This document shows, in pieces, positions 568 through 63,255 of a DNA stretch of 64,000 nt. Position 1 is the stretch's first letter; every line of letters starts with the position of its first letter. The stretch comes from Haliotis rubra. Lineage: Eukaryota. The position numbers and the translations under genes are program-made. The stretch covers positions 744,001-808,000 of the forward strand of contig NW_025766970.1 in assembly GCF_003918875.1 (NCBI RefSeq), written 5' to 3'. The notes below the pieces were generated by a model. That model searched no databases, had not been told where the DNA came from, and worked only from the letters and a program-made list of their open reading frames with translations.

Positions 568-3500
568 CCTGTATACGGAGACGAGAAATCCGGCAGGTCC
601 ATGGCCACCGCCATGAAAGTGTTCTTCATCCTGTCGTTAGGGACGAAGCCGTAGTCAGCTGTCTGGTGCCACCGAATGTCTGTGAAGCCTGTAGTAATGG
701 TGTCATTGTTTTCCCATGGAGCAAGCTGGATGTTTAAAGTAAAAGAGACAACTAACGTCATATTGCTAGACTTGTAACTTCCGGTAACCCCGTTTCGTTC
801 TCAGACAGCGGACCATTTACAGACAGATAAACCTATATCCTTTTGAAATGTGGTGCAGCTAAATCTACAGTTGGGTCACATAAACCAACATCACGTTTAT
901 CCCGTCATTACGGTATGTATGCTATCAAAGATTACCTGGACAAAGCCAAATGGAAACATATCTGATGTCTGAGATTCCGATCCTAGAGAGAACTTCAGTC
1001 TCCAATCGTCGATCATGGCGGGGAAAGTACAGTCATAGATAGCCACACCGGTGTTGTCATGGCGATTTGATTCTCCTGAAATATTGGCTTTTTGAGTCTG
1101 CTGAAGACAAATACTGACAAGTACAGTAGGTTAGTAATCATTTATATGACTTCAACCTAAAGATTCAGGACACCCGTCTGTTTCAGACTGAAAGAGACAG
1201 TATGTGTCGAATGTATTTTCATTTTACTGAACCCACGTGTGCCTGCACATCCGGTTCTATAACGTTTAAAAAGACTAACATTCACATTTTATCAAAACAA
1301 ACAAACAAACAAACAAATTAATAAATAAATAAATAAATAAATGGTCACAATATAATAGAACCTTGTGCTGAAACAGTTCTGAGCTGCTGTTAACTCACCT
1401 TGATACCAAATGGTACCGTATATTGTCATGTTGACCAGCGGTCGGACCATTGCGTTCCAAAGTGAAGAGAAACCCATGGCATCAATGTCTTTCCTTGCAT
1501 TTGTACCGACCCTGCTATCACAAACTTATATTGTGTATGTTTCAACGTAACCATTTATGTCTAGGGATATGGTGATGAAATTGAATTCTTTAATGATATG
1601 TTGAATGAGATCTGTGCATCTACCATGACCCGTCTAACATGAGTGACATCGAATTTTCAAGTTTACTATCCAGTTTACACTATCCAGCAGTAACTGTTCC
1701 ACTAACATGAGACTGGTAGTATCTGTTATCGGTATATCGTTGCTATCTCCATGAGCCGCACAGAATGTATAGTACAAACTGTACGGCAATGTGATGTCTG
1801 ATGACACTTCCATGTCATGACCAACCTGACACGTGAAGAACTGGTCTTCAGCAACCCATGCTTGTCGTAAGAAGCGGTGGGTGGTCAGGCTTGCTGACCT
1901 GGTTGACACATGTAATCGGATCCCATTTGCGCAGATCGATGCTCATGTTGTAGATCACTGGATTATCTGGTCCAGTCTGAATTATTAACAGACCGCCGCC
2001 ATACAGCTCGAATATTGCTGAGAGTGGCGTAAAACTAAACTCACTCACTCATGACCAACCTGAGCGGGTCGCCGTCCATGTTACACTGTTTAAGAGCATC
2101 CGGAGACGACCACAGCTCTACACGTGTCCCACCATAAGACGTTGCTAGGAGACCAACGGGATAGTTCAGAGTGGAGGAAAGGTATTTTCCATACAACCAG
2201 CACACAGCAGAGAAGTACGACCAAGGGGAATGGCCAAGGCTGTCTGCAAACATACAACATAATCCTAGCAATGTGAAGTAATTCAACGGCCATTGTGAGA
2301 TGAAGAATATACATGAAACGCACTGTGGTGATAAAAACACAATTAACAGTTATATAAGCGTTCTAATTTATCCAGATTCATAATAACCGTATGTTGTTAA
2401 GAGGTTACAGCATTACTTGCCATTAGATGGTAAGGTCCACGCCTCCTCCACAGACAGCAAGTCGTACTGAGGAGTACTCGAGCCACCAAGCGTTACAGTG
2501 AACACTCGGATATTGGGATAGTTCACGGCGTCAGCCATCTCTTCAGAAGCATTGAAAGCCTGTCAAGTAGCACGTGAAGTGTGTCGGGTTCACAATGGAA
2601 ATGTATATGCATATGATTGAGCTGCTTCAAATATACCAGCGAGTGGAACTAGTGTTTTCCCGTAAGGGCCATCGGGCGATTATAGAATGACAATGTCATC
2701 AAACAATACGCCGTACAATCACATAAGTTTTAAATACTGACTCAAATGTTTTATTATATGTTTTACTATACAGTTAACGCATATGCTTAAAAAATGAAGA
2801 CATACACACTCGAATGTAGGAAGTTTTACTGTAGGTATTTAAGAATATTTTTTTCAAAAAAGAACTAGCCTGTCGCCATTATGGCGGACCTAAATCAATT
2901 TGCTCTTAAGTGATCGTCTTTTTCCTGTGTTTGGCTGACAATTTTCCGGACATGGCATTCTCTTGCTTGGCTAATCCATCTTACCATATTCAACGTAAAC
3001 TGCATGTTGCTCTGCCCTGAACAGATCCACACATCGCCGAACATTACATCAGACAGGGTTATCTTTTCTTGACTGGTTTCTGCAGTTAGTGTATGGGGTC
3101 CACCGGCCGCCGTTTCCGGAAGTTGGAATGACCAAACACTGGTCCCAGGCGAAGGGCCTATCCTACTACTTGTCGTTCCGAGTGGTGTTCCATCAAGAGA
3201 GATGCGCACAGTATCCGAGTACGTGGATGCATAACCCCAGATATTGGCTCTCTTGGGGGCCTTTTGCAAAACCATGTGGTCGCCATAGTAACTGGCGAAA
3301 CTCAAGTTTCGGTGAGGATACCGTTCCGATACTACCTCAGAAAAAATGACTTCATTTTATGACGATTGTTTAAAATATGCAACATATCTGACATATTAAA
3401 AAAATCAATGGAAGATAAATCTTTAGATTCCACATTGCATAAAATAGGTGTGAAAATCTGAGGGTTGGAATTGTTAAAATCAGTGATGATATCAGATGAT

Positions 3501-5678: not shown

Positions 5679-6600
5679 GTCTACAACGAAGTCAACTGAC
5701 GCCAGATGGCGACCAAGAGATAACGACCGTTCTCATACCGTAATGGTTGTTCAAAATACTGAAATATCAGATTGACTGCCTATAACAAGATATAACATTT
5801 TCCGATAATATGATTAAATCTTGTACATGTACATTTCTCTAACAGACAGTTTATATGAACATGATTTAAGTATAGTGAACACAATTCCAGCAAGCATGTT
5901 CCAGGAGAAATGAAGGTGAAATCGAATGTATTGTAATGTATGTCAACATGTAGAAACAAATTATGCTTATAACTATGATGGTGGTCATTTCCTGGATGGT
6001 TTCGATGGCGAATTGACTCATCCCTTGTTGGCTTAAGTATAACCTGTAACGAACTCTGTTGTGACGTGAGAAGAGATCCACACAGGGTCAATGAATAATC
6101 AACAAATTGTTCTGGAACACATAGGGTTTAGGTCAACTCTCAGGAAGGCAATACAGTGAGTCAGTATAGATACACTGATCTAAGTACTTACAGCAGGGAG
6201 TTATGCAATATGTAGCGTACATATAAAGTTTTGGGTGCAGGTTATCTGTGCCAAATATCCAGGAGATGATACAGCAGTTTTACAGTCTGTGGAATGTTTT
6301 TCCTCTGCTCAAAACAAACTTCACATAGATATCTACGCTGGTGTTTCGTGGAGGGGAATGCCCACTGCAGGTTTATATGGTTCTATTTGGCTGCTACTGC
6401 ACCATTATTGAACAAGTAAGTGAAACCATGTGTTTTGTTGCCTATATACACGGAAACACGTGTCAGAGAATGAACAGGTTTATTGAAGCTTTGAAGGATA
6501 ATCCAGTCAATAGTATGGTGTCAGAGTGAATCTTTAGTACCAAAAATATAGTTTCAAGATAATCTTGGTAGGAGTGTCTATGTCTATGAACGCTGAAGTT

Positions 6601-7220
6601 TGGGGATATGCTGCAAAACAAGGGGAGGCAATCACAGTGAGCATGAGTGGTAAGGGACAGGTGACTATAACGTCCTTTATTGGACCTCTCCCATCAACCC
6701 CTGTGTGGTCCGTTCAACAGCAAAATGCACGTTTCCAACTTGACCCTCGAGAGCTTCCGTCCACCTTGTGCACTACCATCTAATCTCATCAACCATTTGA
6801 ACCCACTAGGTCTGCCCCAAGCAGATATGATCAGATCATTTCTATTTGCTGGTGTCACATTGATCAGATGGTCTTGATGATTCCCAACATTGCCTACTTT
6901 CTTGGCATGGTATGCATTCTTGGGCTTGAAACTAATTTGCAATATGCGATCCATGGCAGCCATATATTGTCAAAACAAATTATTTTTGCAGACTTTTTAA
7001 TTTCAAAAGCTATATTTTCTAAATATCTTTTCCAGACTGCGTGCAAACATATATCCGTACGTACACCTACAGTCTCTGAAGATATCAGCTGGTTCCCGCT
7101 TCCGATCGCATAAAGAGACCGTCAACTACAGCCATGTATGTCCGTGGTCTAATATGCTAACGATGCACGATCTACAACAAAGAAAGTAGATACCCAGCAT
7201 CACCATCTATCAAAGATACA
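6601..7220 (+). pseudogene. Collapsed SIAE-like relic (exon-2 fragment plus decayed last exon)
   Basis: 6601-6718 encodes WGYAAKQGEAITVSMSGKGQVT...PVWSVQ; 7036-7220 resembles terminal exon (SEDISWFPLPIA*...NYS...YNKES) with stops/indels; intervening exons absent. Confidence 0.75.
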
Positions 7221-12187: not shown

Positions 12188-15100
12188 ATGGCGGCTGAAA
12201 TGGAATCAGTTGTATGGAAATTCATTTGGACGGTCATTTATGTGACAGCATTAGCAGCATATTCTGGAAGAGGTAATATTTCTGTCATAGAACACTCTTT
12301 GATTTCAAGCCTTCGATATTATTTAGGCTGTGTCGTATACGTGATGTCTGGCAACAACCATTTTAACTTTGGATTCAGTTCAAGAAATACAATTTAGCCA
12401 ACAAAATAAGAAATACGAACATCAAATGAATGTGTTAAAATTAATATTTATGAAGTATGTACAGGAATGATAGAGCATTGTAAATTGGTAAAGGAACTAA
12501 GAGCATTGCCTTTTTGTTGAGTGATGATTAAATTGTTATTGTGCCTCATTATTTCAAAACCGGCACAGGCAGATAGAGGTGTGTACATCCATACGTCAAA
12601 ACCAATTAAACGACCCATTTACCAGTAGCTTCAGTTTTCTCGGTTTACTATATAAATCTGTTCTTCTGAATTCTCCTTATACCTCTATGATCCCCAGGGA
12701 CCACGGCGCAAAAGCCATTTGCCTTTGCCAGTTACTATGGTAACCACATGGTTCTTCAAAAGGCTCCCCAAAGGACAACTATATGGGGCTATGCTGCAAA
12801 GGAAGGGGAGACAATCACATTGAGCATTAGCGGTAAGGGTCAGGTGACTACAACGTCCTTTATAGGACCTATGGTATCAATGCCTGTGTGGTCAGTTCAA
12901 CTTCCTGCCATTGATGCCGGGGGCCCTTACAACATCACAGCGACATCTAGCGAGGGCAGCATCAACCTAACAGATGTGTTGTTTGGGGATGTCTGGATAT
13001 GTTCAGGTCAGAGCAACATGCAGTTTACAGTCTCCATGGTAAGTTGCCTCAACATAGAGTAGTCTTGCTTTAAATGGAACACGGTGTTGCGGTGTTGATG
13101 TCTGGCTGCTTCCTACTCACATAAGCACCGTGTGTGCTTATAATTAGCAAGTGTCTCTTCTTCTAATGAAATTCCTGCAGTTAATTCTGAAACATGAACG
13201 AACGATTCGAGTTATAGTTTAGTTGGGTCTTGTGGTGCTGTCACAACCAACAGTTCTCCTAAGCGTAAAACCCAGAATGGCCTGCAGCCAACTGGTCTAA
13301 CTACAGCTAACTGTTACTGATGTCTTCTGAGTGGGGGTCATCTCTAATATGTTCTACCCAAGTGTTAAAGGTTTTTTAAAAGAACTAGTGTCATTTTGGG
13401 CTCCAATCACACTATTAGCTCACTCTCCTGTTCTAAGTGACCCAAATACAACTCTTTCACCCCTCTCTTAGAGTTTCGGTTCTAAATCAGTTGTTTATAT
13501 TGCTTCTCCAGGGTCTTAATGCCTCGGAAGAAGAGTTAGATGCAGCTAACCATCCCAACATCCGGGTATTTACAGTTGCCCTGGGAGGGTCTCCTTTTGA
13601 TGAATATGATCTGTTGGGTATCAGTGAACCCTGGTCTGTTCCTAGTGCAGGTACACACATGACATTGAGATTTCTTACGCTTACTCAATATATCAACATT
13701 ATTTAAACGTTCTCTTGATGCTCACAACATGATGCTTCTGTGACATGATTTATAACGTTTACAACGAACAATAACAATATGACGGACATAACGAACTGGG
13801 ATTTTTTGGTCGAAAAACGTACAACGAGCTACGGTTATAACGAACTAAAACATCTGGTCCCTTGAGGTCGTCATAATCGTATTTCTAATAAATGTCAATA
13901 TTTTACACGAATCGTGTTCTTCTCTGTTGCTCGTCGATTATTCCTCCATCATTCTGACGAGTATATCTCCGAAGTTCAATTTTTATTTTCTCTCTCTTTT
14001 CATCTTGCTTCATCAAGACAGCATTGGTGGCTCCCCTTGGTCGTACTTTTCGGCAGTCTGTTGGTTATATGGCAAGTACCTGTCGTCGCATCTCAAATAC
14101 CCCATCGGCCTCATAGCATCATCATACGGAGGAACCCGAGTGGAGGCGTGGTCAGCTCCCAGTGTTCTCAAGAAATGTGATATAACCGATGTAGCCGACG
14201 TAAACGATGCTACAGATGTTTCTGGTGTTGATCCAAATGCTGCTTCTGTTTTGTGGAACGCCATGATACGACCGTTCCTGAACATGACCATATATGGAGC
14301 CATATGGTATCAAGGTGAAGGTCCGGGTTAGAATATTGATCTTCAGTAAACCATGCTTGTCGTAAGAGGCGACTAACGGGATCGGGTGGTCAGGCTCGCT
14401 GACTTGGTTGACACATGTCATCGGTTCCCATCGGATCGATGCTCAGGCTGTTGATCACTGGATTGTCTGGTCCAGACTCGATTATTTACAGACCGCCGCC
14501 ATAAAGCTGGAATATTGCTGAGTGCGGCGTAAAACTAAACTCACTCACTCACTCACTCAAGGTTAAACGACATCAAACCTGTCTTTTTTAGATATATTTA
14601 TCCTCCAAAATGCTAAACCTCAAAATCGAGTTCAAGAGCAGAAATTTTCAAAATAGAAACGTAAACGAGATGAGTCGATCTGTGTGTCATGCAGCATTCA
14701 ATACACATACAATATTTTGCATTTAATGTTGTTTGTAACATGTACCACAATGTAATGAGCAATCATGAGTAGTGACAATAACTATAAAAGATCAAACGTA
14801 AATCAGCAGGTCGTCAAATTTTTCCCCTCTAATTGGAAGAGGGAATGGTGCGACTGAATACTTCCAATCGCTACATCGTCATAGTAACAGTATGGATGTA
14901 CACACCTCTATCTGCCAGTGCCCACAAACTAACAGTCACACACAGCACCATATCTGGTGTATGGGATCGGTATACCCTCCTCAGTTCAACACAAGAGTGT
15001 ATACGTGTGTCTTTGAACTGGCTTAATCTCATGTGTAACACATGCAAGAAACACACCGTCGATGACAACCAACTCTATTCCTAAAACAGTCCTAACAATA

Positions 15101-18100
15101 TGTGTTCCAGGCGAGTCCAATGCGACACCACCCACAACAATGAACCAGTACAACTGTACGTTCCCCGCCATGATTGATGACTGGAGAGACAGGTTCCATG
15201 ACGGCTCCCTTGGTCAAACCGATCCACTGTTCCCGTTTGGATTTGTACAGGTTAGGCTATTCCTTTGTCTTCATATTTATGCAATGATGCTATCTTCTAG
15301 GAATTGTACATCAGGAAATGAATGTTTTTTTCCAGGCATCCACCCTCATAATTCCCGACAAAAGAATTAGAGTTAAATGTTGGCAATACCGGAAATATTT
15401 CCTCTTATCCGATCAGAAAGGTCCAGTTTAACCGTCTTTCTGATGAACTGTATAGTTCCGCACAGGAATAAAATGAATGCCCTTCACCGCTTTTAAACAT
15501 GAGATGATTTATCGTGATGTTACAAGTGTAAATTGGTAAGAAATGTTAAATGAAGAAAACAACCTGTCCCTTACATTAATAACACACTCATACATTCATA
15601 AGAAATATTTTCAGTCATACATCTGTGTGTACCGATATCACCTGTTATGTTACAACGCTTATCGGAAAGTGACCATTTTGGTCATTTACTTAAAATGATA
15701 TGAAGGCAAGAATTTTATGGATGTCAACTTCTTTATTTTGACAATACAGAAGCTGAAATCCATAAATTCTTGCCTTTATATGTATCACTTCTAAATGCCA
15801 TTCAGAGACTCAAATGATATGCAAATTATACATCCTTTGTTTACAAAGAAATACAGGGTCGGAATTGTTTGTTGGCTTTTCAGTCAGAATTTATCAAAGG
15901 GGATTTGGATAATTTCTGAGAGTGTTAGCACTATCCAATTAAGTGTTCACAATAGTGATAGGCAGTGTCTGACATGGCCATTGGATGGTGAAATGATTTG
16001 CAAAACCAAGCTGCCAACACACCTCTGCATCTTATGGTATTTTCTCGAATGTACAGCAGATCGTGCATCACACTTACCAAATGGGCAGAAGGTGTCCGAC
16101 ATTTACTCCTTATTTCCCTTTAATTTATTGCTGCGTGGAACATCTGACTGCAGTTTGTAACGTTGGGACTGATAAACAAAGTGACATCTTCGGACAAGGG
16201 TAGCTTCCATGTAACACAGGACTATAACGGGGTGACTGGTGGATTGGTAATAGGATCATGAAACGGAATTATAAAGCGTTTGTGACTAGTGTTTAAGAAT
16301 TATATTATATGAGGCTAACGCCTTTGTGTGTCGTGGTAAATATTCTGTATCAGACACCACTCGCTAAATGTAATATTAAACATAATGTCCACGTGAATGT
16401 GTATTCACTCACTCACTCCTTCCTTCCATTTTCTGTATGTGATTTTACCCTGAAATATGGGGATAAATTCTGAATTGTTTGCAGCTTGCTCCATGGAGAA
16501 ACACTGACGTCATTACAACAGGTTTCACAGACATTCGGTGGCACCAGACAGCTGACTACGGCTTCGTCCCTAACGCACGGATGAAGAACACCTTCATGGC
16601 AGTGGCCATGGACCTGCCGGATTTCTCGTCTCCTTGGCAAAGGTATCAGAAATAGTTTGTTTGTTGTTTAAAGCCACACTCTGACGGCGGTCTGTAAATA
16701 ATCGAGTCCGGACCAGACAATCCAGTGATCAACATCATGAACATCGATCTACGCAATATGGTTACGATGACATTTGTCAACCAAGTCAGTGAACCTGACC
16801 ACCTGATCCCGTTAGTAGCCTCTTACGATCCTGATCTTCACGGGTTTTTCAGAATAATTTAAAACCAAAATGACTTTGGTCTTTGATTTGTCCCTGCCAA
16901 TCTTTCTGGAAGTCTCTTTACACATATCTCTTGGGAATGAGACTTTACATGTAACAAACATGTACTTTCAGTATCCATCCCCGGGACAAGCAGGATGTGT
17001 CTATGCGTCTGTGTACAGCTGGACTTGCTGTGGCCTACAACCAAACTCAATACTCCACCCTCAGTGGTCCCTACCCTTCTAGTTTTACTATCTTGGCGCA
17101 GGAAGAATCCGTACAGATAACATATGACAAGGTTCTGGAAATTAGATCGAAATCAGGCTTTGAGGTCAGTGGCCATTGCTACTGCTATGTTTAAAAGTTG
17201 TGTCAACAAAACAATTGTTATGTTCTTTCTTCTATTTCCGTTGAGATTTTCTTTAGTTCTTATGTCGCTGGTCGTAGGTTTTTCCAGGGGTAGATAGCGT
17301 GAGTTTTTGTGCACTGTATAATGAAATGGAATCTTTAGTAAAATAGCATGTATTTCTGGTGACAAAGATGAGTGGCAGTATACATTATATCGGTTACGTT
17401 GTCAGTTTATTGCAAATATGTATCATTATTTAATTATTTAATATGACCGTGTATTGTTCAAATGATCTTAAAGGTTTTAGACATTTCGACTCCAAAGGCA
17501 ATATCTATGCACACACATTTAGATCGAAATAGAATCTGTTGTATGAAAACTCCGAGTTAAGATATTTTGAAATCATGGAAAGATGTGTAATAATGTTATA
17601 TGCAGTATCCGACAGCTTTTAGTTATTCAAAACTTAACTGACCCCTCTTCCAATTAAATTTTGCAAGGTTTTTCTTGCTAATGATCAAGTGTAGCAAATA
17701 TATATGAGCGGAGAAGTGCATTTCCTCAAACTCCAGAGACCATTTAACTCATTTTTCGAGCAAATCCGTGACTTACGAAGATTTTGTTACCACGTGTTTG
17801 TTCTGTTTTGATCTGTATACCCTGAAAATAAACTTGGGTCAATGACTGCAAATGTTTAGATATTTAAAGTGACAATCGCTCAAATCAGCTCGCGAAAGGT
17901 GAAGGATAAACTGTTCTAATCCAAGACCTTATGATTCTGTTTATTGTTTTTCTTTGCCTTCAGGTGACATGTGTCCCCGCCAACAGTTCATCAGGACCAC
18001 ATGACAATTCAGTGTGGTTCCCCTTGCCTATGACGTCACATGATAACACATCAGTTACCCTTAACTACAGCCAACTATGTCTTCGGTCTAGAGACATGGT

Positions 18101-18218
18101 GGTGTCTGCCATACGTTATGCCTGGCGAGAGTCGCCGTGTCCCTTTAAACAGTGTGCGGTCTACAACAAGGATAGTGGCTACCCTGGGCCACCATTCATT
18201 CGATTTGTTAGGCAATAA
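12188..18218 (+). CDS. SIAE: SIAE-like sialate O-acetylesterase, copy 2 (8 exons, apparently intact)
   Basis: Exons 12188-12272, 12698-13038, 13512-13650, 14018-14314, 15111-15250, 16485-16642, 16972-17164, 17964-18218; signal peptide, GQSNM, YGGT, WYQGESN, DL...IHP, RYAW motifs; GT-AG, phases consistent. Confidence 0.93.
14316..14556 (+). mobile_element. SINE family A inserted at exon-4 donor of copy 2
   Basis: Family match; TSD tcaaggt spans the splice donor. Confidence 0.85.
16655..16845 (-). mobile_element. SINE family A, antisense, start of intron 6 of copy 2
   Basis: Reverse complement of family; approximate TSD tcagaaatagttt/tcagaataattt; absent at the equivalent site in copy 3. Confidence 0.8.
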
Positions 18219-26600: not shown

Positions 26601-27874
26601 ACAAACCAAAATGGGGGACGCCGCTGCAGACGCTTTTTCTCGAGTTGCAAACTTTAGAGTGAAGTCTTCAATTTGGAAACATTTTCAATTGATCTCTTGT
26701 ACAATCACATCTTAGCCCTGACAGTGACCAGTGGCATTGTTTCAAAAGAAAGGAAACAATAATTTCATTACCTTAACCCAGGTGTACACTTTCACAATAC
26801 GGAAATTTTGGCAATACTCAACCCTATTAGTATCTCCTTTGTATTTCTATTTACCGACAATTTCTGTTTACCGACTAAAGCAGGACAGTATGTGTTACCA
26901 GCATCATTCATTGTACGTTACCGACATCCAGACTTTGAGTTACCGACATCCTCGCGCCATTTTAAAAATGCATATTCTTCAACACATAGACATTTATAAG
27001 CAAATTCAGTGCATTCAGTGTATTCGCACCATCAAAGTTTATCAGTGTGCTAACTAATGTTGATTGTATACACGTGGAAGACTGCTTATTCGAAGGGAAT
27101 AATCGCCAAGCGATCTTGTCTGCCGCCATGTTGTGATGTTGGTAACGCACGTTACCAGCATCACCTTAGATACAGTGAAAGTGTGTAATGAGGTTATGAA
27201 CAGTTTCAGACAGTTTCCAATAGTTCACAACGTAACTGGCATTTTTGTCTATCAAAGTTTGCAAGGTTTTGTTTGCTAATGATCAAGTATGGCGATTGTG
27301 AGCGAAGGAAATTTCCAACATCAAGACATCATTTAACTCCTTTTTCGATCAAGTCCGTGACTTTTTCTTGCCACACGTTTATTCTGTATTGATCTGTATG
27401 CCCTACGATAATCAACCTGGGTCAATGATTGGCTTATGTTTTGATATTCAGACTGGCAATCGCCATACACGGCCTTTGCGAAACATTTTACCTCATGTTC
27501 ACAAGTTTGACAATGTTCATATCAACACATGCTTGTTTAGGAAGGACAAACTGTTTGGATCTTGTAATACTTAGTGATTCAGTTCTGTTCGCCTGTCTAT
27601 TGTTTTTGTTCGCCTTCAGGTGACATGTGTCCCCGCCAACAGTTCATCAGGACCAGATGACAATTCAGTGTGGTTCCCCTTGCCTATGACGTCACATGAC
27701 AACACGTCAGTGACTCTCAACTACAGCCAACTATGTCTTCGGTCTAGAGAAATGGTGGTGTCTGCCATACGTTATGCCTGGCGAGAGTCGCCGTGTCCCT
27801 TTAAACAGTGTGCCGTCTACAACAAGGATAGTGGCTACCCTGGGCCACCATTCATTCGATTTGTTAGGCAATAA
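20641..27874 (+). CDS. SIAE: SIAE-like sialate O-acetylesterase, copy 3 (8 exons, open frame)
   Basis: Exons 20641-20725, 21110-21450, 22440-22578, 22926-23222, 23414-23553, 24404-24561, 24798-24987, 27620-27874; closest to copy 2; YGGT changed to YEGT. Confidence 0.92.
21574..22138. mobile_element. Degenerate non-autonomous DNA element with many ACAACGTT subterminal repeats (EnSpm/CMC-like)
   Basis: Starts cccatctaacacacaacgtt; dense aacgtt repeats at both ends; absent from copy 2 intron 2. Confidence 0.5.
25464..27177. mobile_element. Non-autonomous long-TIR DNA transposon, CAC...GTG termini, 5-bp TSD (Transib/RAG-like)
   Basis: cactgtatctaaggtgatgctgg...ccagcatcaccttagatacagtg; TSD aaagt at 25459-25463 and 27178-27182; ~430-bp inverted arms; absent from copy 2 intron 7. 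Confidence 0.75.
26344..26826 (+). mobile_element. hAT deletion derivative nested in right arm of long-TIR element
   Basis: TAGGG...CCCTA termini, 8-bp TSD ttagtatc; retains MGDAAADAFSRVANFRVKSSIWKHF (BED zinc-finger start) from 26611. Confidence 0.8.
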
Positions 27875-34937: not shown

Positions 34938-35227
34938 GCTATTTTGATATAATGGATATAAATCGTAGAGTCTGGATACGCACCAAAATATGTCAGATGT
35001 ACTTAATCAACAAAGTTTGGAATCGAGGAATAATTCCTTCATCGCTTCATCGCTTTTAAGAGGGGCATATTCAAAGGTCACCAATAAGTTTACGAGTTGA
35101 ATATTTCCCCCACAACCAATTAAGCCCAGTACCATACTATCTTATACATTCACTGAACTAAAACAAGTGCGTATACATTGTCATGTCAGAGACAAGGACG
35201 AGGTGGATGACTCACAGCGGACCATAG

Positions 35228-41414: not shown

Positions 41415-44400
41415 ATGGAACGGACTGCCTGGCTAGTTCTCCTGATTGCCATCAGTTGGGTTGTACCGGCAGCTCATACAGCAGATGGTAGGTTTACCAT
41501 CATTATTAACACGTCTGGGTGAGCAACCGCACAAACGCGATTGAGCAATTTCCGGTTTCAATGTATGAATGCACTGCTTTGAAAGATGAAGGCTCTTATA
41601 CATGCCACTACAAATGAAACATTAAAACTTTTGGAACCTAAAGGATGTCAGCCCTGAATTATGTTTGAATTTCTTGATTTTAAATGATCCATTCCGAAAA
41701 GTTTTACGATTGCCTTTTTCACCAGATGGAATCTGTTTCGGAGGATAATCCAAACTCAATGAAAATCGGTCGATGTTAAGCCGTAGATATAGACCCCAGG
41801 ATGTTGTTTACATGTGTAGAACGGCAAGTAATGTAGCGGGTGTTAAAAGTGATTTGTTTTATTGACATACTTCTCTGTTACACCTCCTTCGTTCAGGCCA
41901 AATCAAACAATCACGTAACATTTTATCATTCATCCATTTCAGGGACAGGGGCGGTTAAACCTTTTTCCTTTGCCAGTTACTATGGTGACCACATGGTTCT
42001 TCAAAAGGCTCCCCAAAGGACAACTATATGGGGCTATGCTGCAAAGGAAGGGGAGACAATCACATTGACCATTAGTGGTAATGGTCAGGTGACTACAACG
42101 TCCTTTATAGGCCCTATCCTATCAACTCCTGTGTGGTCAGTTCAACTTCCTGCCATTGATGCCGGGGGCCCTTACAACATCACAGCGACATCTAGCGAGG
42201 GCAGCATCAATCTAACAGATGTGTTGTTTGGGGATGTCTGGATATGCTCGGGTCAGAGCAACATGCAGTTTACACTTTCCATGGTAAGTTGCATCAGAGG
42301 TTCGTGATGTTTGAGACTGATCTGACAAACCCATGAGGAATGAGATATCAATGTCCGAAGATTGCTTATTATTGTTTATTGTTTATAGTGGTTGTCACTT
42401 GAAACCAGTGAAAATCTTATATTGAATATTTGAAAGTCACAATCAATACAATTTAAAACTGTGTGAAATCTGTGTTTGGAATCTTTAAAGTGGTAACACA
42501 GTGGTGTATCTCCTGATTTTGGTATCATCCATGCAGGCCTTCAATGCTACGAAAGAGGTGGCAGAAGCCGCCAACTATCCCAACATCCGGGTGTTTACCG
42601 TTGCTCTGGGAGGGTCTCCGGTAGAGGAATATGATCTGCTGAACATCAGCCAACCTTGGTCTGTTCCGAGTGCAGGTAGAAGCAGCGGCTTCAGTGTTCA
42701 TCTTCATTAGAAGTCGTTATCTGTCAGCACCTTTCTAAACATATCATTGCCCGAAACATATTGTTTTAATAGGTTACCTTTGCTGTTGTCTTAAAGGGTG
42801 TCACGAGATCCATTCTTGCATGATTTCACTTATTATATATGAAACATAATATTCCTCCCATAAACTGACTATTCAGGTTGCACACCTCATACACAATGAT
42901 ATTCTGTGGACATTGTCCATCACAAGCTTCCTTGAGCTTTATACTGTGATTGTCAAAATAGGTAAGTATAGACTAACATTGAAAACTTTTACTGTGTTCA
43001 AATAACTGTGCATATTTCGTGCACTTTGATTGATACAAGGATGACACGAAGCACGTTCACGGTCACATGTTCTGAAGATGTAGTTTCAATGCTGGTGTTC
43101 CTGCCACAAAACGCTATGGCCACGAGTGGGGCGTTCCGATCTGTAGCTAGTGTGGTCACTCTGTGTTGTTTTCAAACCTTGGCACGAGATGGTCTATGGC
43201 CTCCACTACAAAAGAAATAAAGGTTGACCTGACTGGCGTGCTAAAACCTTGGCACAGATTGATACGCCAATGTCCATTCAAACCATCTTTGTGTTTTTAA
43301 CCTACAAATTGCAAAGTAAATGTCTAAAACAGTATTTTCCTGCTATCAAGCTACTATTGGCGGTCCGGACTGGTCTTACTTTTCGGGAGTATGTTGGTTA
43401 TATGGCAAGTACCTGTCGTCGCATCTCAAATACCCCATCGGCCTCATAGCATCATCATACGGAGGAACCCGAGTGGAAGCGTGGTCAGCTCCCAATGTCC
43501 TCAAGAAATGTGGTGTAAGCGAGGCTAAGGAAGTGTCGAGTGTGAACCCTAATGCTGCTTCTGTTCTGTGGAATGCCATGATGCGACCCTTCGTCAACAT
43601 GACCATATATGGAGCCCTCTGGTATCAAGGTACAAAACAGATTTTTTAACATAAATTAATTAGATTTTTATACGGTTGAAGGAATACATGTTAAAAATTT
43701 CCATTTCACATCTCATTGCTACCTTACAGAGAAGAAATGAATATGCATATGTTGATCCAATGTGTTCATGGAATCGAGGATATTATTTAAAGAGAAGGAG
43801 GTGAGTGTGTTTTGGATAGATCACTGTCAGGGCTTATACTACAGGAGAGTAACCTGGACTCTGAATCCAGGAGGCCACCTGATACAAGAACATACCAACG
43901 TCAAGGTTGTAGCACCCAGATATGAAAAACCTGAATCCATGTGACCATGTCACTATCGGTCGCAATGAAGAGAAACCATGGACCACGTGAAGACCAGGCA
44001 AAGAACTATAGAGTAACTATATGGAATGAATCAATAGTCCAACAGGACACAATGAATCAGTATATCACTCTTCTGTGTCCAGGAGAAGCCAGTGGATCAC
44101 AGAGCAACGTGGTCGATGACCCAAAAGAGTCAATGGAATACCTATAGACCGAACAATGAATTAGTGTGTGTTTTACCGTTTGCGAATATTTCAATATTCT
44201 GTGACCAGGTGAAGCCAATGCTCGGTCTCCAACAATGAACCAGTACAACTGTACGTTCCCCGCCATGATAGATGACTGGAGAGACAGGTTTCATCAAGCA
44301 TCAGGAGGACAAACAGACCCAGTCTTTCCTTTTGGATTTGTACAGGTGAGATACATTAATATTGTACAAGATACTTGAGGGTGGTGACAGGTCATAACAG

Positions 44401-46065
44401 TTTTGATCTATGTGCTGTTAAGCTCAGCGTTCACAGTTACATATATCCTAACAAAGACAACAGACGGTCAGTCTGTGTGAACTTCAACATGTTATTATAA
44501 CTGATATTTCTGTCGTCTATGATCTAATAATGTTCAGATATGGTCATATAGCCATCTATAAGTCCCCTCCATTGCTTTACGAACCAGAACTAGAAGTAAA
44601 AGAATAGTTGGAATCGGGCAATAGACATATCTAGCGATATCTTATGATTATTTGGTTTTGTCCCATTTATCTGTATTTTTTTAGAAGGTCAAACATTTCC
44701 TTGTAACACATAGGAGGTTGAGACATTCACACATTATTGTTGTATATTCATCAGGTGTTCTTTTAAATTACTGCCATTGTATACATGAACAGTTCATTTT
44801 AGCCACTGGTTGGACGTGATGAAGATTTTAATGTGAATTATGGGGATATAACGTCTGATATGTTTGTATGCAGCTTGCTCCATGGAGGGACAATGACACC
44901 ATTACTACAGGCTTCACAGATATTCGGTGGCACCAGACAGCTGACTACGGCTACGTCCCCAACGACAGGATGAAGAACACCTTCATGGCGGTGGCCATGG
45001 ATCTGCCTGACTTTACCTCTCCATACACAGGGTATATCGTTTTACTTGTTTAAAGTCTTGCAATTATCGTTAGTGTCTTTAAGAAACGTGCAGTTCACAC
45101 TGTTGTATGTACTTTCAGTGTCCATCCCCGTGACAAAGAGGATGTGTCTATGCGTCTGTGTACAGCTGGACTTGCTGTGGCCTACAACCAAAGTCAGTTT
45201 TCTGTACTCGACGGACCAATCCCTGGTCTGTTCATAATCTACACCGAACAAAGAACCATGGCGATAGAGTTTTACAAACCCCTTGATATCAGATCAACAA
45301 CAGGCTTTGAGGTCAGTGACAACTACTATTTCAGTTTGGGCTTGGTCAACACATTTCAGCTGAGCCAATGCTGGACCGGGGATTGAACCTGTAACCAGCT
45401 AGAAAGCTTAGAAATGTGATGTATCCAACCTCGCTACTGACTAAGCAACAAGGGGTTTTGATATACAATGTCCAGCGACATTTTGATGTATTTTGAAATT
45501 AGTTTTGCCCGGTAAACTTCCACTTTGATATATGTACATAACTAAACGTTAGGAATATTCTCAGTGTCCAGGTCAAGGATGAATCTGACTGGATGTTTGG
45601 AGATATAGTTGGTTTACAAGTAGGAGGATCATATGGTTGAGAAAAGAAAGTTGAGATTAATATCCACCTGCTGTGAATCAGTCGATACACGGGCTGTTTT
45701 AATACCAGATAATATGATTTACAATACATTGCAGTCGGCAAAGTGATCTGGTGATCATCTATAAATGTACGTTTGCGTCTATATAACTTAGGTGACATGC
45801 AGAAACAGTTCCTCTCCGTCCACGGATGCGTCAGAGTGGTTCCCCTTGCCTATTACGTCACATGACAACACATCAGTGACCCTCAACTACAGCCAAATAT
45901 GTCTGGAATCTGAAAACAAGGTTGTGTCTGCTATACGCTATGCTGGAGAGAGTCACCATGTCCCTTTAAACAGTGTGCAGTCTACAACAGCCAGAGTGGC
46001 TATCCTGCGCCACCGTTTATCGAAACTTTTGTTGATGATATGGCAAATGTTAAAATTGTGAAATA
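41415..46065 (+). CDS. SIAE: SIAE-like copy 6 (8 exons; 1-nt deletion in last exon alters C-terminus)
   Basis: Exons 41415-41487, 41943-42283, 42537-42675, 43351-43629, 44209-44345, 44874-45031, 45119-45311, 45792-46061 (46065 if frame restored); RYAW motif broken at ~45944. Confidence 0.85.
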
Positions 46066-48099: not shown

Positions 48100-51000
48100 A
48101 TGGGACGAGCTGGTTGGATCGTTCTCCTGGTTGTTCTAGTGGTTTCTGTAGAAGGTAGGTTTGTTCTTACATCAAAGAAACATCTCATCACCTTCAGAAT
48201 CGAACATTTAAAAATTCAAAGTAGGACATTGTAGAAAACATTCTAGAAAACAGCTTTGCTCTTACTCTTAGAAACGTGAAGGCAGTCTACGTGGGACTGC
48301 TTGGACGATATTTAGTACTAGTACTGATTAATATTTTCAGGGCTCCATTCATGCAATTTTCAACACAATGTGGTCATATTACGTCCAATAAAATCAGCTT
48401 CAGTATAAAATCGAGACTGGTCATTCCCTGTAGTTGACGTTTTAATTCCTGTCCTGCATTCATTCTCGCTGCCAGGAAACACGCTAAGATGAACTAAAAC
48501 ATCAGTATCGAACAGAAAAAAATAGTCCAAGCTCCACTTTTATACTTTAAAGAGGATTGTTAAAGTTGCAGGAAAAATTGCTTGTTGTAATTTTGATACT
48601 TTAGACAACCTGTACATGTCATCAGTTTTAAATTTTTCTGTCAGAATCTTACAAGACCCAACCCATGTTTTAAACCCTTGTTATGCACTTTTACTATCTG
48701 GCTGTAGGTATCTTTTACTAAATGTAAAGTCAAAGAGAAGTAAACACTCTTTTATACCAGTTAGCATATCCTTCTTAAACAAGTCTTAAACATTATTCTC
48801 TTAGTATATTTATTGGTAGATGTTTGTCTTATAAATAATGTTGTTTACTATGCATTCAATGACATTGTTGCTGCTCGTGTCTTAAATGTTGTTTTCTTAT
48901 GTCTCTGAACTCTGATGTACACAAAATTCCCTTTCGGGCAATAAAGCATTATCGTATCTTATCTTATTTTATCATAAGTCGATGTTAAGCTGTGGAAATG
49001 ATGACTTTAATCAATATTGGGATATGCCTTAGATAAGTACGGTTGCTTTGAATGAACTGACCTACCAAGGATTGTGTCAGGGTAGGTTATGTTGCGGCAT
49101 ACGTTTTGACAACCTTGTCTGATATTACTTCAAGTTTTATCATATATCTATTTCAGGGACAACAGCAGTCAAACCTTTTTCCTTTGCCAGTTACTATGGT
49201 GACCACATGGTTCTTCAAAAGGCTCCCCAAAGGACAACTATATGGGGTTATGCTTCAAAGGAAGGGGAGACAATCACATTGACCATTAGTGGTAAGGGTC
49301 AGGTGAATACAACATCCTTTATTGGACCTATCCCATCAACTCCTGTGTGGTCAGTTCAACTTCCTGCCATTGATGCCGGGGGCCCTTACAACATCACAGC
49401 GACATCTAGCGAGGGCAGCATCAATCTAACAGATGTGTTGTTTGGGGATGTCTGGATATGTTCGGGTCAGAGCAACATGCAGTTTACACTTTCTATGGTA
49501 AGTTGCATCAGAGGTTCGTGATGTTGGAGACATTCCGCTGTAAAGGTTCATAAAGTACTGATATGTCACACTCTTAGCGAATAAAACAGGAATATTGCTA
49601 GATATTGTTTATCACGATAACTTGTTGGCACCGTAAACTAGTGAGAAACTGACATTGAATATATAAAATACTTTCACTCACAATCAATACCGTTTATCTC
49701 CTGGTGTGGTTTATTCATGCAGGCCTTCAATGCCACGGAAGAGGAGGCGGAAGCCGTTAACTATCCCAACATCCGGGTGTTTACAGTTGCCCTTGGAGGT
49801 TCTCCGGTAGAAGAATATGATCTGCTGAACATCAGCCAACCTTGGTCTGTTCCTAGTGCAGGTAGAACCATCAGCTTCAGTGTTCAGCTTTATTAGCAAT
49901 CGTTATGCGTCAGCACCTCTAAACATATCATTGCTCTAAAAGTATCGTTTCAACAGTTCTATTTTGCAGCTGTCTTCGCGATTATTTAAAACAGTGTTAT
50001 CCTTATCGCCTTATGGTTACACATCACATTCAAAATGTAATTAGATAGGCTTATGACGAGGTTCGCCATACCATGCCAACAGTGATTGCCATACAGATTT
50101 CTTAATCAGAAGATAATGTCTTAGGTTTTTGCTCCAAAGTTCCAAATAATATTTGGCTAAAACATCGTTTTCTTGCTGTCAAGATACTGTTGCCGGTTCA
50201 GATGTGTCGGGCTTTTCGGCAGTATGTTGGTTATATGTTAAGTACCTGTCGTCGCATCTCAAATACCCCATCGGCCTCATAGCATCATCATACGGAGGAA
50301 CCCGAGTGGAGGCGTGGTCAGCTCCCAATGTCCTCAAGAAATGTGGTGTGAGCGAGGCTAGGAAGATGTCGAGTGTGAACCCTAATGCTGCTTCTGTTCT
50401 GTGGAACGCCATGATGCGACCCTTCGTCAACATGACCGTATATGGAGCCCTCTGGTATCAAGGTAAAAGTAGTTAAGATTGGACTTGGTGCCGTCTCTGT
50501 CCGTTTTTATTGAAACATTATTCTGAAAAGTATTAAACATGTTGGTGGGACCGTTCATGAAATTTATTCTCAAAATATTACATGTTAAGGGACCGTTCAT
50601 AAGTTTATGGTGGGGGTGGGGGTGGGGAGGGCATAATTTAAAATATTCTCTTAAATCATCATAAAAATGTTACTCGCTTGTAAGCGGGGAACACTGAAAA
50701 TAATAGAAGAGCGCTCAGCCAATCAGAAAACGACAATTATGTGTCAAGTAAGATAGGTCCACATATTCACCTCAGCATCCGGTGTATCATGAAAACGGAG
50801 AGATTGGCTAAGATAAACCAACATTTGTCTATAGAACCAGTTTACACCAAACACATATCATTCTTTAGTTTCCTAGGTAGGAAATAGGCATGTACGAAAC
50901 TGAGCTGACAAGTGTTCCCGCCGTTCTTCTTCTTGAAAACCATGTAAATGTAGAGATAGACCAGAATCTGTGTGGGCAACCCTGATTTAAGCCTTTCAAA

Positions 51001-52016
51001 CAGAACTCTTTAATTTCCCAGAAAATATTTCTGTACTCGGAAGTGCGAGTAGCAACCAATCACATTTATAAGTTAAACATTTTACCTCGAAAATGCATTT
51101 GATAATAAATCAAAATAAATAAAATGTTGACTCTCGGTGCAACAGTAGAGAGGAAGATGTAACAGGAGTATGTAAACCTAGTTGAAAGAAAAACGTGTTG
51201 CAACCATTGTAAGTACAGATATAACAGTAGAGTATAACCAAACCTGACCTAGCGCGACGTCTTGAGTCCCTGTCCGACATTTTGATTTAAGATGGGCTTA
51301 TTTCAATATTTGCAGCTGTAATGGGTGAATCAAAGGAGAAACATACCACCTGTAGACCAAACAGTGAACCAGATCATAGTGGAAGATGACTCTGAAAGAA
51401 CGAACGAAATGGTAAACAATTTAATATGTGTACCACTGTTCTGTGCCCAGGTGAAGCCAATGCCGGATCTCCAACAATGAACCAGTACAACTGTACGTTC
51501 CCCGCCATGATAGATGACTGGAGAGACAGGTTTCATCAAGCATCAGGAGGACAAACAGACCCAGTGTTTCCTTTTGGTTTTGTACAGGTATGATTCATCA
51601 CTACTGCTACTACAAACGCCACAACAATCCTTGGCGATGCGGGGCGGTGGGGTAGCCAAGTGGTTAAAGCATTCGCTTGTCACGCCGAAGACCCGGGTTC
51701 AATTTCCTACATGGGTACAATATTTGAAGATCATTTCTGGTATCCCCCACCGTGATATTGCTGGAATATTGCTAAAAGCAGCATTGAACTAAATTCACTC
51801 TTACTCTTACTCACCTTGACGATGCAATGCCACATATATTTCAAAGCAATTTGTTAATATTAACTACAGCAAAGGAACATTTCTGCTACAAATTCCCCTG
51901 ACAGAATAAGATAGGTAACACACAAACAGTAAATATGATCCTCAGTATGACATAACCATTACTGGAAAGTACTGATGTCAATGAGTAGTAATAGAGGATG
52001 TGTTTGTGTTTGTGTT

Positions 52017-52070
<54 letters not shown>

Positions 52071-63255: not shown

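What the first reader, a model, noticed from the sequence alone, without database searches (positions are those of the whole stretch)
568..63255. Birth-and-death array of secreted SIAE-like esterases
Seen: at least six full or near-full copies plus pseudogenes and relics in 64 kb, all with signal-peptide first exons. Known: SIAE is typically single-copy in vertebrates, and SASA/SGNH enzymes are carbohydrate O-acetylesterases. Inference: in a protostome, where sialic acids are generally scarce, this expansion may serve another substrate such as dietary algal or microbial O-acetylated glycans, making it a candidate undescribed digestive or mucosal enzyme family.
Basis: partly seen in the sequence, partly recalled or inferred. 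Interest (0 to 1): 0.7.

Follow-up and report, generated by a model that had tools for sequence, protein, structure and literature searches.

The report
Abalone tandem array of SIAE-like esterases
This stretch of the blacklip abalone genome holds a real, still-changing tandem cluster of six genes (plus dead fragments) for secreted sugar-deacetylating enzymes of the sialic-acid-esterase type. The enzyme family and several of these genes are already annotated, but what the enzymes act on in an animal thought to lack sialic acid is unknown.

Summary
Observation confirmed. The window is Haliotis rubra contig QXJH01000300.1, about 744001-808000. It carries six SIAE-like (CAZy CE20; Pfam SASA + SIAE_C) genes of eight coding exons each.

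- Z (minus strand) runs off the left edge.
- A, B and E have open reading frames.
- C has a 1-nt insertion in exon 4.
- D has a 1-nt deletion in exon 8 that removes the conserved C-terminus.
- There is also a truncated copy (C'), a gutted relic, and a duplicated exon pair inside E.
- Every copy has its own signal-peptide-like first exon.

Catalytic Ser (GQSNMQFT) and His (HPRDK) motifs are kept. The protein of copy E aligns end to end with solved vertebrate SIAE (E = 5e-126). H. cracherodii has the same array in the same order with its own gains and losses, so this is not an assembly artefact. Ortholog dN/dS of 0.11-0.19 indicates working enzymes.

The "birth-and-death array of secreted SIAE-like esterases" is therefore supported. 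"Undescribed family" is not: B (partial), D and E are RefSeq "sialate O-acetylesterase-like" proteins, and multi-copy sets occur in many molluscs. The non-sialic substrate idea is untested, but it fits literature that lophotrochozoans lost sialic-acid pathways and that CE20 includes polysaccharide deacetylases. Moderate interest.

The parts
568..5678 (-). Gene Z, partial: exons 7-8 lie beyond the window start. Exons: E1 5615-5678, E2 2985-3331, E3 2421-2559 (GC donor), E4a 2060-2243, E4b 1399-1511, E5 936-1075, E6 568-725. Catalytic Ser codon at 3009-3011.
   Evidence: It is 90% identical to H. cracherodii P0159 and has no stop codons. An extra intron splits exon 4, as in P0159.
6241..7152 (+). 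Relic of a lost gene, the ortholog of H. cracherodii P0158. It keeps an exon-1-region remnant (6241-6475), 40 codons of exon 2 (6598-6717) and a 3'-end remnant (7026-7152). About 6 kb of the gene has been deleted.
   Evidence: It sits in the same position and orientation as P0158, next to the Z ortholog.
12188..18218 (+). Gene A: 8 exons, open frame of 1608 nt. Exons: E1 12188-12272, E2 12698-13038, E3 13512-13650, E4 14018-14314, E5 15111-15250, E6 16485-16642, E7 16972-17164, E8 17964-18218. Ser codon 13012-13014; His codon 16976-16978.
   Evidence: No protein for it was found in the databases searched. A SINE-like insert abuts the exon-4 donor.
20641..27874 (+). Gene B: 8 exons, open frame of 1605 nt. 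Exons: E1 20641-20725, E2 21110-21450, E3 22440-22578, E4 22926-23222, E5 23414-23553, E6 24404-24561, E7 24798-24987, E8 27620-27874. Ser codon 21424-21426; His codon 24802-24804. It has SYEGT in place of SYGGT (23036-23038).
   Evidence: RefSeq XP_046574639 (P0269, 399 aa) is a partial model that starts at an internal Met in exon 2.
29118..29810 (+). C': a truncated dead copy. It consists of exon 1 (29118-29202) plus exon 2 with an in-frame stop and frameshifts. Exons 3-8 are absent.
31434..38583 (+). Gene C, probably a young pseudogene. Exons: E1 31434-31494, E2 32480-32820 (GESNM instead of GQSNM), E3 33333-33471, E4 34023-34320, E5 36056-36192, E6 37289-37446, E7 37569-37761, E8 38311-38583. 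E4 is 298 nt where A and B have 297. The extra A near 34163 causes a frameshift and 2 stop codons. A partial duplicate of the exon-2 5' end lies at 32348-32431.
   Evidence: No gene is called there in the record's annotation. It is the ortholog of an intact 526-aa gene in H. cracherodii. dN/dS against that gene is 0.35.
41415..46061 (+). Gene D = RefSeq XP_046574663 (P0163, 529 aa). Exons: E1 41415-41487, E2 41943-42283, E3 42537-42675, E4 43351-43629, E5 44209-44345, E6 44874-45031, E7 45119-45311, E8 45792-46061. A 1-nt deletion in E8 (near 45941-45944) replaces the conserved C-terminus. The gene is a mosaic: exons 2-6 are closest to E, and exon 7 is closest to C.
   Evidence: The H. asinina ortholog P0323 keeps the canonical C-terminus.
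48100..63255 (+). Gene E = RefSeq XP_046574661/2 (P0322/P0161, 533 aa). Exons: E1 48100-48154, E2 49157-49497, E3 49723-49861, E4 50184-50462, E5 51451-51587, E6 60171-60328, E7 60421-60622, E8 62965-63255. Ser codon 49471-49473; His codon 60425-60427.
   Evidence: It aligns end to end with 8F9Q at E = 4.7e-126. dN/dS against the H. cracherodii ortholog P0157 is 0.14.
57728..58280 (+). Duplicate exon pair of gene E: E6' 57728-57885 and E7' 58079-58280. RefSeq isoform X1 uses this pair in place of 60171-60622. It is part of a ~2.3-kb tandem duplication (56791-59100 versus 59152-61368). A partial E7 5' piece lies at 57956-58042.

Best explanation
Shown. This is a genuine, lineage-specific tandem array of sialate-O-acetylesterase-like genes in the blacklip abalone Haliotis rubra. 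The family is eukaryotic-type CAZy CE20: an N-terminal beta-sandwich, an SGNH/SASA catalytic domain and an SIAE_C domain. The array evolves by birth and death.

Shown, births:
- A and B are younger than the H. rubra / H. cracherodii split (dS 0.15 against 0.34-0.52).
- D is an E-5'/C-3' mosaic lying between C and E, as unequal crossing-over would produce.
- Exons 6-7 of E are tandemly duplicated, and RefSeq models them as alternative pairs.

Shown, deaths:
- The P0158 ortholog is gutted to a relic.
- C' is truncated.
- C is frameshifted.
- D has lost its C-terminus.

Inferred. The open copies (A, B, E, Z) encode secretory-pathway glycoproteins. Each has a signal-peptide-like exon 1; A, B and E carry 10-12 N-X-S/T sequons, and Z has 4 in its in-window exons. 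They work as Ser-His SGNH esterases. The Ser of GQSNMQFT attacks an O-acetyl ester, the His of HPRDK acts as the base, and the block II Gly and block III Asn form the oxyanion hole. The result is removal of O-acetyl groups from carbohydrates.

Inferred, weaker. Lophotrochozoans are reported to lack sialic-acid synthesis and uptake. The substrates are therefore more likely exogenous O-acetylated glycans (food algae, biofilm or microbial polysaccharides and nonulosonic acids) than endogenous sialoglycans. The paralogs may have diverged in substrate or in site of expression.
For: Array and gene models.

Genome identity: D and E exons are 100% identical to H. rubra RefSeq proteins, and the locus was fetched.

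Family: single exons hit 8F9O-R at 4e-22 and 1e-28. P0161 aligns with 8F9Q at 4.7e-126 over residues 26-527, with all motifs aligned. Pfam SASA + SIAE_C is on record for P0161 and P0163.

Catalytic residues: the codons were located in every copy. Their roles come from PMC8319020 (human S127, T132, H377) and PMC12313940 (GQSNM block I; eukaryotic SIAE is CE20 with a Ser-His dyad).

Not an artefact: the H. cracherodii chromosome has the same order and orientation. It reads P0159(-), P0158, a frameshifted unannotated copy, P0162, a 526-aa gene, P0157, then a 570-aa gene, and colinearity extends into introns.

Selection: dN/dS is 0.14 (E), 0.11 (Z) and 0.18-0.19 (A, B) against orthologs.

Phylogeny: the window genes fall in a Haliotis-only clade of 16 proteins (support 99). 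That clade is separate from three older Haliotis SIAE lineages.

Substrate premise: PMC5811610 and PMC6994554. CE20 members that deacetylate xyloglucan or xylan: PMC12313940.
Against: - There is no expression, tissue or enzymatic evidence of any kind here.
- No assembled transcript matching these genes turned up in the protein searches.
- RefSeq gives no protein for A or C, and only a truncated model for B. That model lacks the catalytic Ser exon.
- B and its H. cracherodii ortholog carry Glu in place of the first Gly of the GGT motif, which may alter catalysis.
- The indels in C and D could be assembly errors. The D deletion shortens a CC dinucleotide, so the number of 'dead' copies may be overstated.
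- Signal peptides were judged by eye only.
- Purifying selection shows that the proteins matter. It does not show what they act on.
- The sequence motifs are those of bona fide sialate esterases.
Confidence: 0.8

Rival explanations
1. The enzymes are true sialate (or other nonulosonate) O-acetylesterases, like vertebrate SIAE. They act on sialic or related nonulosonic acids that the abalone meets in food or microbes, or makes in trace amounts. The expansion tunes specificity for different O-acetyl positions or linkages.
For: - Alignment with vertebrate SIAE structures is full-length and colinear, with every catalytic motif and the C-terminal Cys-containing motif conserved.
- Identity to fish and frog SIAE is 47-52%.
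- Amphioxus, which does have sialic acids (PMC6994554), also carries several copies.
Against: - Lophotrochozoa are reported to have lost sialic-acid synthesis and uptake (PMC5811610).
- Claims of sialic acid in such animals are treated with caution (PMC6994554).
- A clade of about 16 members for a substrate the animal does not make is hard to explain.
- CE20 relatives act on plant polysaccharides (PMC12313940).
Confidence: 0.25
2. The array is an immune or surface-defence family. The secreted esterases would strip O-acetyl groups from microbial capsules, peptidoglycan or parasite glycans. They would diversify under host-pathogen pressure, as many tandem immune gene families do.
For: - Rapid turnover with gains, losses and gene conversion.
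- A sialic acid acetylesterase transcript was listed among immune-challenge-responsive candidates in the snail Biomphalaria (PMC3299671).
- First exons are divergent, and paralog dN/dS (0.25-0.33) is higher than ortholog dN/dS.
Against: - There is no sign of positive selection. All dN/dS values are well below 1.
- No expression data exist for abalone.
- The Biomphalaria authors themselves say that no immune role is documented.
Confidence: 0.15
3. The array is mostly decaying DNA. Only one or two copies (for example E) are functional, and the others are unexpressed or on the way to pseudogenes. The expansion would then have no adaptive meaning.
For: - C', the relic, C and D carry disabling or truncating lesions.
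- A has no protein in the databases, and B has only a partial model.
- H. cracherodii also has a frameshifted copy.
Against: - A, B, E and Z have open frames and canonical splice sites.
- dN/dS against H. cracherodii orthologs is 0.11-0.19 over dS 0.34-0.52, which means long-term constraint.
- Distinct orthologs of A/B, C, D, E and Z are annotated as intact genes in H. asinina and H. cracherodii.
Confidence: 0.1
4. The array is an assembly artefact: a single gene or a few genes falsely expanded by mis-assembly of haplotypes or repeats.
For: The contig comes from a draft assembly. Two copies carry single-base indels of the kind that assemblies produce.
Against: - The copies are far too diverged to be haplotypes. 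The closest pair, A-B, has dS 0.15, and the others 0.24-0.57.
- Each copy has different introns and repeat insertions.
- The same ordered array exists in an independent chromosome-level assembly of H. cracherodii.
Confidence: 0.02

Closest known systems
Vertebrate sialate O-acetylesterase SIAE (solved structures 8F9O-8F9R; 8F9O is dog SIAE)
   Same: - Same length class (about 530 aa) and the same domain order.
- End-to-end alignment (E = 4.7e-126).
- The GQSNMQxT Ser/Thr motif, the GGT motif, WYQGE(S/A)N, the (S/G)IHPRDK His motif and the C-terminal RYAW..PC..KQC..PAPPF motif are all conserved.
- A signal peptide and many N-glycosylation sequons.
   Different: - About 45-50% identity.
- At least 12 genes in H. 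rubra, with six in this array, against generally one in vertebrates.
- The host belongs to a clade reported to lack sialic-acid pathways.
- One lineage (B / P0162) has Glu in the GGT motif.
- Activity is untested.
[quoted passage not shown]
   Same: The N-terminal beta-sandwich plus SGNH core and the GQSNM block I are shared. Exon 2 and exon 4 hit these chains at 1e-10 to 1e-14. The whole protein hits them at about 1e-45.
   Different: - The bacterial enzymes carry an inserted ancillary beta-sandwich domain and use a water-mediated Ser-His-(H2O-Asp/Asn) triad.
- Eukaryotic SIAE-type proteins lack the insert and use a Ser-His dyad (PMC12313940).
- The abalone proteins align colinearly with the insert-less vertebrate type.
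The orthologous SIAE-like array of Haliotis cracherodii (JAJLRC010000003.1, 40.835-40.897 Mb), and annotated paralog sets in H. asinina, Patella, Liolophura, Sinanodonta and Branchiostoma
   Same: - Same gene order and orientation, starting with a head-to-head Z/P0159 gene.
- Colinear introns for C, E and Z.
- All are named 'sialate O-acetylesterase-like'.
   Different: Relative to H. cracherodii, H. rubra has:
- lost the P0158 ortholog (now a relic);
- gained or retained D and C';
- a frameshifted C where H. cracherodii has an intact 526-aa gene;
- an intron 5 of E expanded from 1.5 to 8.6 kb.
H. cracherodii has its own frameshifted copy.
Birth-and-death multigene families in general (tandem arrays with turnover, pseudogenes and occasional gene conversion)
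   Same: - Tandem same-strand copies.
- Lineage-specific gains and losses against a sister species.
- Pseudogenes and relics.
- Mosaic copies.
- Exon 2 homogenised among paralogs.
   Different: Nothing unusual for the class. The point of interest is the enzyme family and the host.

Membership tests
SIAE / eukaryotic-type CAZy CE20 (Pfam SASA PF03629 + SIAE_C PF28112) | Block I GQSNM motif with the nucleophilic Ser, and a Thr five residues later (human S127 and T132) | tested here: met
   GQSNMQFT is present in Z, A, B, D and E. C has GESNMQFT, with Ser and Thr kept. Residue roles come from PMC8319020 and PMC12313940.
SIAE / eukaryotic-type CAZy CE20 (Pfam SASA PF03629 + SIAE_C PF28112) | Catalytic His in block V (human H377) | tested here: met
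   (S/G/I)(I/V)HPRDK sits at the start of exon 7 in A, B, C, D, E and the duplicate exon of E. It aligns to SIHPRDK of 8F9Q. Exon 7 of Z lies outside the window.
SIAE / eukaryotic-type CAZy CE20 (Pfam SASA PF03629 + SIAE_C PF28112) | Oxyanion-hole residues: block II Gly and block III Asn | tested here: met
   SYGGT and WYQ-G-E(S/A)N are present in all copies. The exception is B, with SYEGT, a change shared by its H. cracherodii ortholog. Which Gly is the oxyanion residue was not checked on a structure.
SIAE / eukaryotic-type CAZy CE20 (Pfam SASA PF03629 + SIAE_C PF28112) | Significant full-length similarity to characterised or solved SIAE, and matching Pfam domain hits | tested here: met
   P0161 (= gene E) aligns with 8F9Q at 4.7e-126 over residues 26-527 versus 13-503. 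SASA + SIAE_C are precomputed for P0161 and P0163. Single exons reach only sub-threshold SASA scores (19.6-22.7 bits against a cutoff of 24.8), as expected for fragments.
SIAE / eukaryotic-type CAZy CE20 (Pfam SASA PF03629 + SIAE_C PF28112) | No ancillary beta-sandwich inserted in the SGNH domain (eukaryotic type) | tested here: met
   The alignment with about 500-aa vertebrate SIAE is colinear with no large insert. Bacterial 636-644-aa CE20 chains match in two separate stretches.
SIAE / eukaryotic-type CAZy CE20 (Pfam SASA PF03629 + SIAE_C PF28112) | Esterase activity on 9-O- or 4-O-acetylated sialic acid | not testable with these tools
   This needs recombinant protein and substrate assays.
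Secreted / secretory-pathway protein | Cleavable N-terminal signal peptide | tested here: inconclusive
   Exon-1 peptides of 18-28 residues have a short, mostly basic N-terminal region (A, B and C' begin with an acidic MAAEME stretch), a 10-14-residue hydrophobic core and small residues near the end. This holds for Z, A, B, C', C, D and E. No predictor was available. In A, B and C' the hydrophobic core is preceded by an acidic stretch and could act as a signal anchor.
Birth-and-death tandem gene family | Tandem paralogs with pseudogenes, plus lineage-specific gain and loss relative to a related species | tested here: met
   The evidence is the relic of the P0158 ortholog, C', the frameshifted C, the truncated D, the young A/B pair, the mosaic D, and the independent frameshifted copy in H. 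cracherodii.

The most novel reading that the evidence does not exclude
The Haliotis-only clade of about 16 SIAE-type CE20 genes, to which this array belongs, has left sialic acid behind. It would then be an animal-encoded set of secreted polysaccharide de-O-acetylases that helps a seaweed grazer digest O-acetylated algal or biofilm glycans. The paralogs, and the mutually exclusive exon-6/7 pairs of gene E, would provide different specificities.
Probability: 0.25. Interest if true: 0.65.

Novelty: new member of a known kind. Interest (0 to 1): 0.4.

Why it matters
SIAE is studied almost only as the vertebrate enzyme that edits O-acetyl sialic acids in B-cell tolerance, gut mucus and virus receptors.

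Here the same fold sits in a constrained, actively turning-over array. That array is part of a roughly 16-gene abalone-specific clade, in an animal group reported to have lost sialic-acid metabolism. This makes a concrete question testable: what do SIAE-type CE20 esterases do where there is no endogenous sialic acid?

If the answer is deacetylation of dietary polysaccharide, it would add carbohydrate esterases to the endogenous seaweed-digesting enzymes of abalone. Those already include cellulases, and abalone is an aquaculture species. It would also widen the known substrate range of eukaryotic CE20.

If the enzymes are strict sialate esterases, that argues for a role against exogenous or microbial nonulosonic acids.

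As it stands, this is a well-documented but ordinary kind of genomic object: a tandem gene family, already partly annotated.

Tried and rejected
- Pfam on single ORFs and exons gave only sub-threshold SASA hits. Identity had to come from PDB sequence searches and full-length database proteins.
- The representative-library search with one exon returned mostly fragments and fused models at 50% clustering. It was useful only as a source of reference proteins.
- Literature searches for abalone or Haliotis plus acetylesterase, and for SIAE gene-family expansion, found no paper describing this array. The paper describing the 8F9O-R structures is not in the library, so substrate-binding residues could not be compared.
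- Rfam and tRNA scans of the window were empty, so the SINE-like repeat could not be tied to a tRNA or 7SL head.
- ORFs in the 5.4-kb insert of E's intron 5, and other long ORFs, have no Pfam match.
- I considered whether the lesions in C and D are assembly errors. The C insertion is not in a homopolymer. The D deletion shortens a CC pair. This is unresolved.
- A simple 1:1 orthology of A and B with the two H. cracherodii copies was rejected. Non-coding matches go both ways, and A-B dS is below ortholog dS. The cause is either independent duplication or gene conversion.
- Spliced protein models of A, B, C and Z were deliberately not joined. All searches on them were exon by exon, by reference, and dN/dS counts were summed over per-exon alignments. 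For D and E, the identical RefSeq proteins P0163 and P0161 stood in for the spliced products.
- No contig taken for human was met.
Full report
**Observation.** The window has no N runs and about 40% G+C. DNA self-comparison and clustering of six-frame stop-free segments show seven peptide families that recur in the same order along the plus strand, and once on the minus strand at the left edge. Two of these segments hit solved 'sialic acid acetylesterase' chains 8F9O-8F9R at 4e-22 and 1e-28, and bacterial CE20 esterases more weakly. Pfam sees only a sub-threshold SASA match on single exons.

**Source and annotation.** A one-exon search of the representative library supplied reference proteins. 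Word searches with two of them returned many 'sialate O-acetylesterase-like' proteins from Haliotis and other molluscs.

- Exons of copy D are 100% identical to H. rubra XP_046574663 (P0163).
- Exons of copy E are 100% identical to XP_046574662 (P0161).
- Exons 3-8 of copy B match XP_046574639 (P0269). This is a 399-aa model that starts at an internal Met.
- The fetched locus places the window at about 744001-808000 of QXJH01000300.1, assembly GCA_003918875.1.
- No gene is called over copy C in that record. No protein matching copy A was found.

**Gene models.** I derived exon boundaries for each copy from conserved AG/GT sites and from alignment to the RefSeq proteins and orthologs. Those copies were searched exon by exon by reference, and the RefSeq proteins P0161 and P0163 stood in for the spliced products of E and D. 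Each gene has eight coding exons.

- A (12188-18218, 1608 nt), B (20641-27874, 1605 nt) and E (48100-63255, 1602 nt) are open with canonical splice sites.
- Z (minus strand, 5678->568) is open through exon 6 and then leaves the window. It has a GC donor after exon 3 and an extra intron in exon 4. Its H. cracherodii ortholog shares that intron.
- C (31434-38583) has a 1-nt insertion in exon 4, not in a homopolymer, which creates two stop codons. It also reads GESNM for GQSNM.
- D (41415-46061) lacks 1 nt in exon 8 relative to every other copy. The RefSeq model reads on in the wrong frame. The H. asinina ortholog P0323 keeps the canonical RYAWRESPCPFKQC... C-terminus.
- C' (29118-29810) is exon 1 plus a broken exon 2 only.
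- The relic at 6241-7152 keeps traces of exon 1, 40 codons of exon 2 and the 3' end of a gene.
- Every copy with a 5' end has its own signal-peptide-like first exon. This was judged by composition only.

**Family and mechanism.**
- P0161 aligns with vertebrate SIAE 8F9Q over residues 26-527 (E = 4.7e-126). GQSNMQ(F/M)T, GGT, WYQGE(A/S)N, (G/S)IHPRDK and the C-terminal Cys-containing motif are all in register.
- In human SIAE, S127, T132 and H377 are essential (PMC8319020).
- Eukaryotic SIAE is assigned to CAZy CE20. It lacks the ancillary domain of the bacterial members and uses a Ser-His dyad (PMC12313940).
- The corresponding codons are present in all copies.
- B and its H. cracherodii ortholog have SYEGT instead of SYGGT.
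- A, B, D and E carry 10-12 N-X-S/T sequons and 7-9 Cys.
- The most likely mechanism is therefore that of an SGNH O-acetylesterase in the secretory pathway. This is inferred from sequence, not shown.

**Reality of the array, and birth and death.** Four look-ups place the H. cracherodii relatives on one chromosome in this order:

- P0159 (minus strand)
- P0158
- a 13.5-kb stretch with no annotated gene
- P0162
- a 526-aa gene
- P0157
- a 570-aa gene

blastn of the window against this 65-kb region gives these matches:

- Colinear matches, extending into introns, for Z-P0159, C-526-aa gene and E-P0157.
- Two-way matches of A and B to P0162 and to an unannotated copy in the 'gap'. That copy has a frameshift in exon 7.
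- The window's relic lies exactly where P0158 lies.

Per-exon Nei-Gojobori counts, summed without joining sequences, give these values:

| Pair | dN/dS | dS |
|---|---|---|
| E vs ortholog | 0.14 | 0.34 |
| Z vs ortholog | 0.11 | 0.52 |
| A, B vs P0162 | 0.18-0.19 | about 0.4 |
| C vs ortholog | 0.35 | 0.42 |

- A versus B has dS 0.15, below the ortholog values.
- D versus E has dS 0.12-0.33 in exons 2-6 but 0.77 in exon 7. In exon 7, D is nearer to C (dS 0.37).
- D is thus an E-5'/C-3' mosaic lying between C and E, which is the product expected of unequal crossing-over.
- D has a >=90% identical ortholog in H. asinina, so it is not brand new.
- Exon 2 is homogenised among A-E.
- Inside E, a 2.3-kb tandem duplication doubled exons 6-7. 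RefSeq isoforms X1 and X2 each use one pair and differ at four residues.

**Wider context.** A tree of 48 annotated proteins puts the window genes in a Haliotis-only clade of 16 (support 99). That clade holds the Z/P0159 lineage, a second seven-member subclade found elsewhere in the genome, and the A-E subclade. Haliotis also has three older SIAE lineages shared with other gastropods. H. rubra has at least eight annotated SIAE-like genes on four contigs, plus the copies here that have no protein on record. H. cracherodii and H. asinina each have about ten on one chromosome. Neighbouring locus tags in Patella caerulea and Sinanodonta, and several genes per chromosome in Liolophura and amphioxus, show that multi-copy SIAE-like sets are common outside vertebrates.

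**Interpretation.**
- The literature in the library says that sialic-acid synthesis and uptake were lost in Lophotrochozoa (PMC5811610).
- It also says that sialic acids are absent from most invertebrates, and that contrary reports need mass-spectrometric proof (PMC6994554).
- CE20 includes xyloglucan- and xylan-associated deacetylases (PMC12313940).
- Together with purifying selection, this makes a non-endogenous, possibly non-sialic substrate a reasonable inference. Nothing here tests it, and no tissue or expression evidence was obtainable.
- Snail and earthworm papers mention SIAE homologues only as differentially expressed candidates (PMC3299671, PMC11184841, PMC6160089).
- No paper found describes the abalone array.

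**Verdict.** The 'birth-and-death' reading is well supported. The family is known and partly annotated, so this is a new (undescribed in print) member set of a known kind. The open and testable point is the substrate of SIAE-type esterases in an animal thought to lack sialic acid.

Noticed in passing
window 14316-14555 (also 1838-2051, 10797-11041, 32885-33083, 33729-33964, 16649-16822 minus strand): A SINE-like repeat of about 240 bp that ends in (ACTC)n. One copy landed exactly on the exon-4 splice donor of gene A. Its TCAAGGT target-site duplication regenerates a GT donor, now GTGAAG. Another copy lies inside the extra intron that splits exon 4 of gene Z, within 10 nt of that intron's donor. 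There is no Rfam or tRNA match.
   Followed up: partly
window 56791-61368: A tandem 2.3-kb duplication inside gene E doubled exons 6 and 7. RefSeq isoforms X1 and X2 each use one pair and differ at four amino acids, one of them five residues after the catalytic His. This looks like mutually exclusive exon pairs born by tandem exon duplication. A perfect 45-bp x 2.9 repeat (59551-59680) sits at the duplication junction. The left unit's 57707-58044 is 94% identical to gene C (37270-37610), which suggests gene conversion.
   Followed up: partly
window 52077-57439: A 5.4-kb insert with higher G+C (0.43-0.47) lies in intron 5 of gene E. It is bounded by 61-nt inverted repeats (82% complementary) and begins next to a (TG)40 run. 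It is absent from the H. cracherodii ortholog, whose intron is 1.5 kb. Its ORFs have no Pfam match. It is possibly a non-autonomous DNA transposon.
   Followed up: partly
window 9833-10234 (minus strand): An ORF with HTH_38 / HTH_Tnp_Tc3_2 matches. It is a remnant of the DNA-binding domain of a Tc1/mariner-type transposase, lying between the relic and gene A.
   Followed up: no
window 3709-4248; 19145-19353 and 8174-8239; 25463-25816 / 26825-27178: Three repeat features. A 49-bp x 11 minisatellite lies in intron 1 of gene Z. A 29-bp tandem repeat between A and B has an inverted short partner 11 kb away, and the flanks (7804-8239 versus 19288-19756) are also inverted copies. A pair of 354-bp inverted repeats (97% identical) lies in intron 7 of gene B and is likely the ends of a 1.7-kb element.
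   Followed up: no
L002/L005 (H. cracherodii JAJLRC010000003.1, about 40849400-40856200): An unannotated eighth SIAE-like copy lies between P0158 and P0162 in H. cracherodii. It has a frameshift in exon 7 and an altered start codon, so it is an independent pseudogene in the sister array.
   Followed up: partly
window 23036-23038 (gene B) and H. cracherodii P0162: The first Gly of the conserved S-x-GGT motif is Glu in gene B and in its H. cracherodii ortholog. In B only, the residue two positions before the catalytic His is Ile instead of Ser. The lineage is nevertheless under purifying selection (dN/dS 0.19), which hints at altered catalysis or specificity rather than decay.
   Followed up: no
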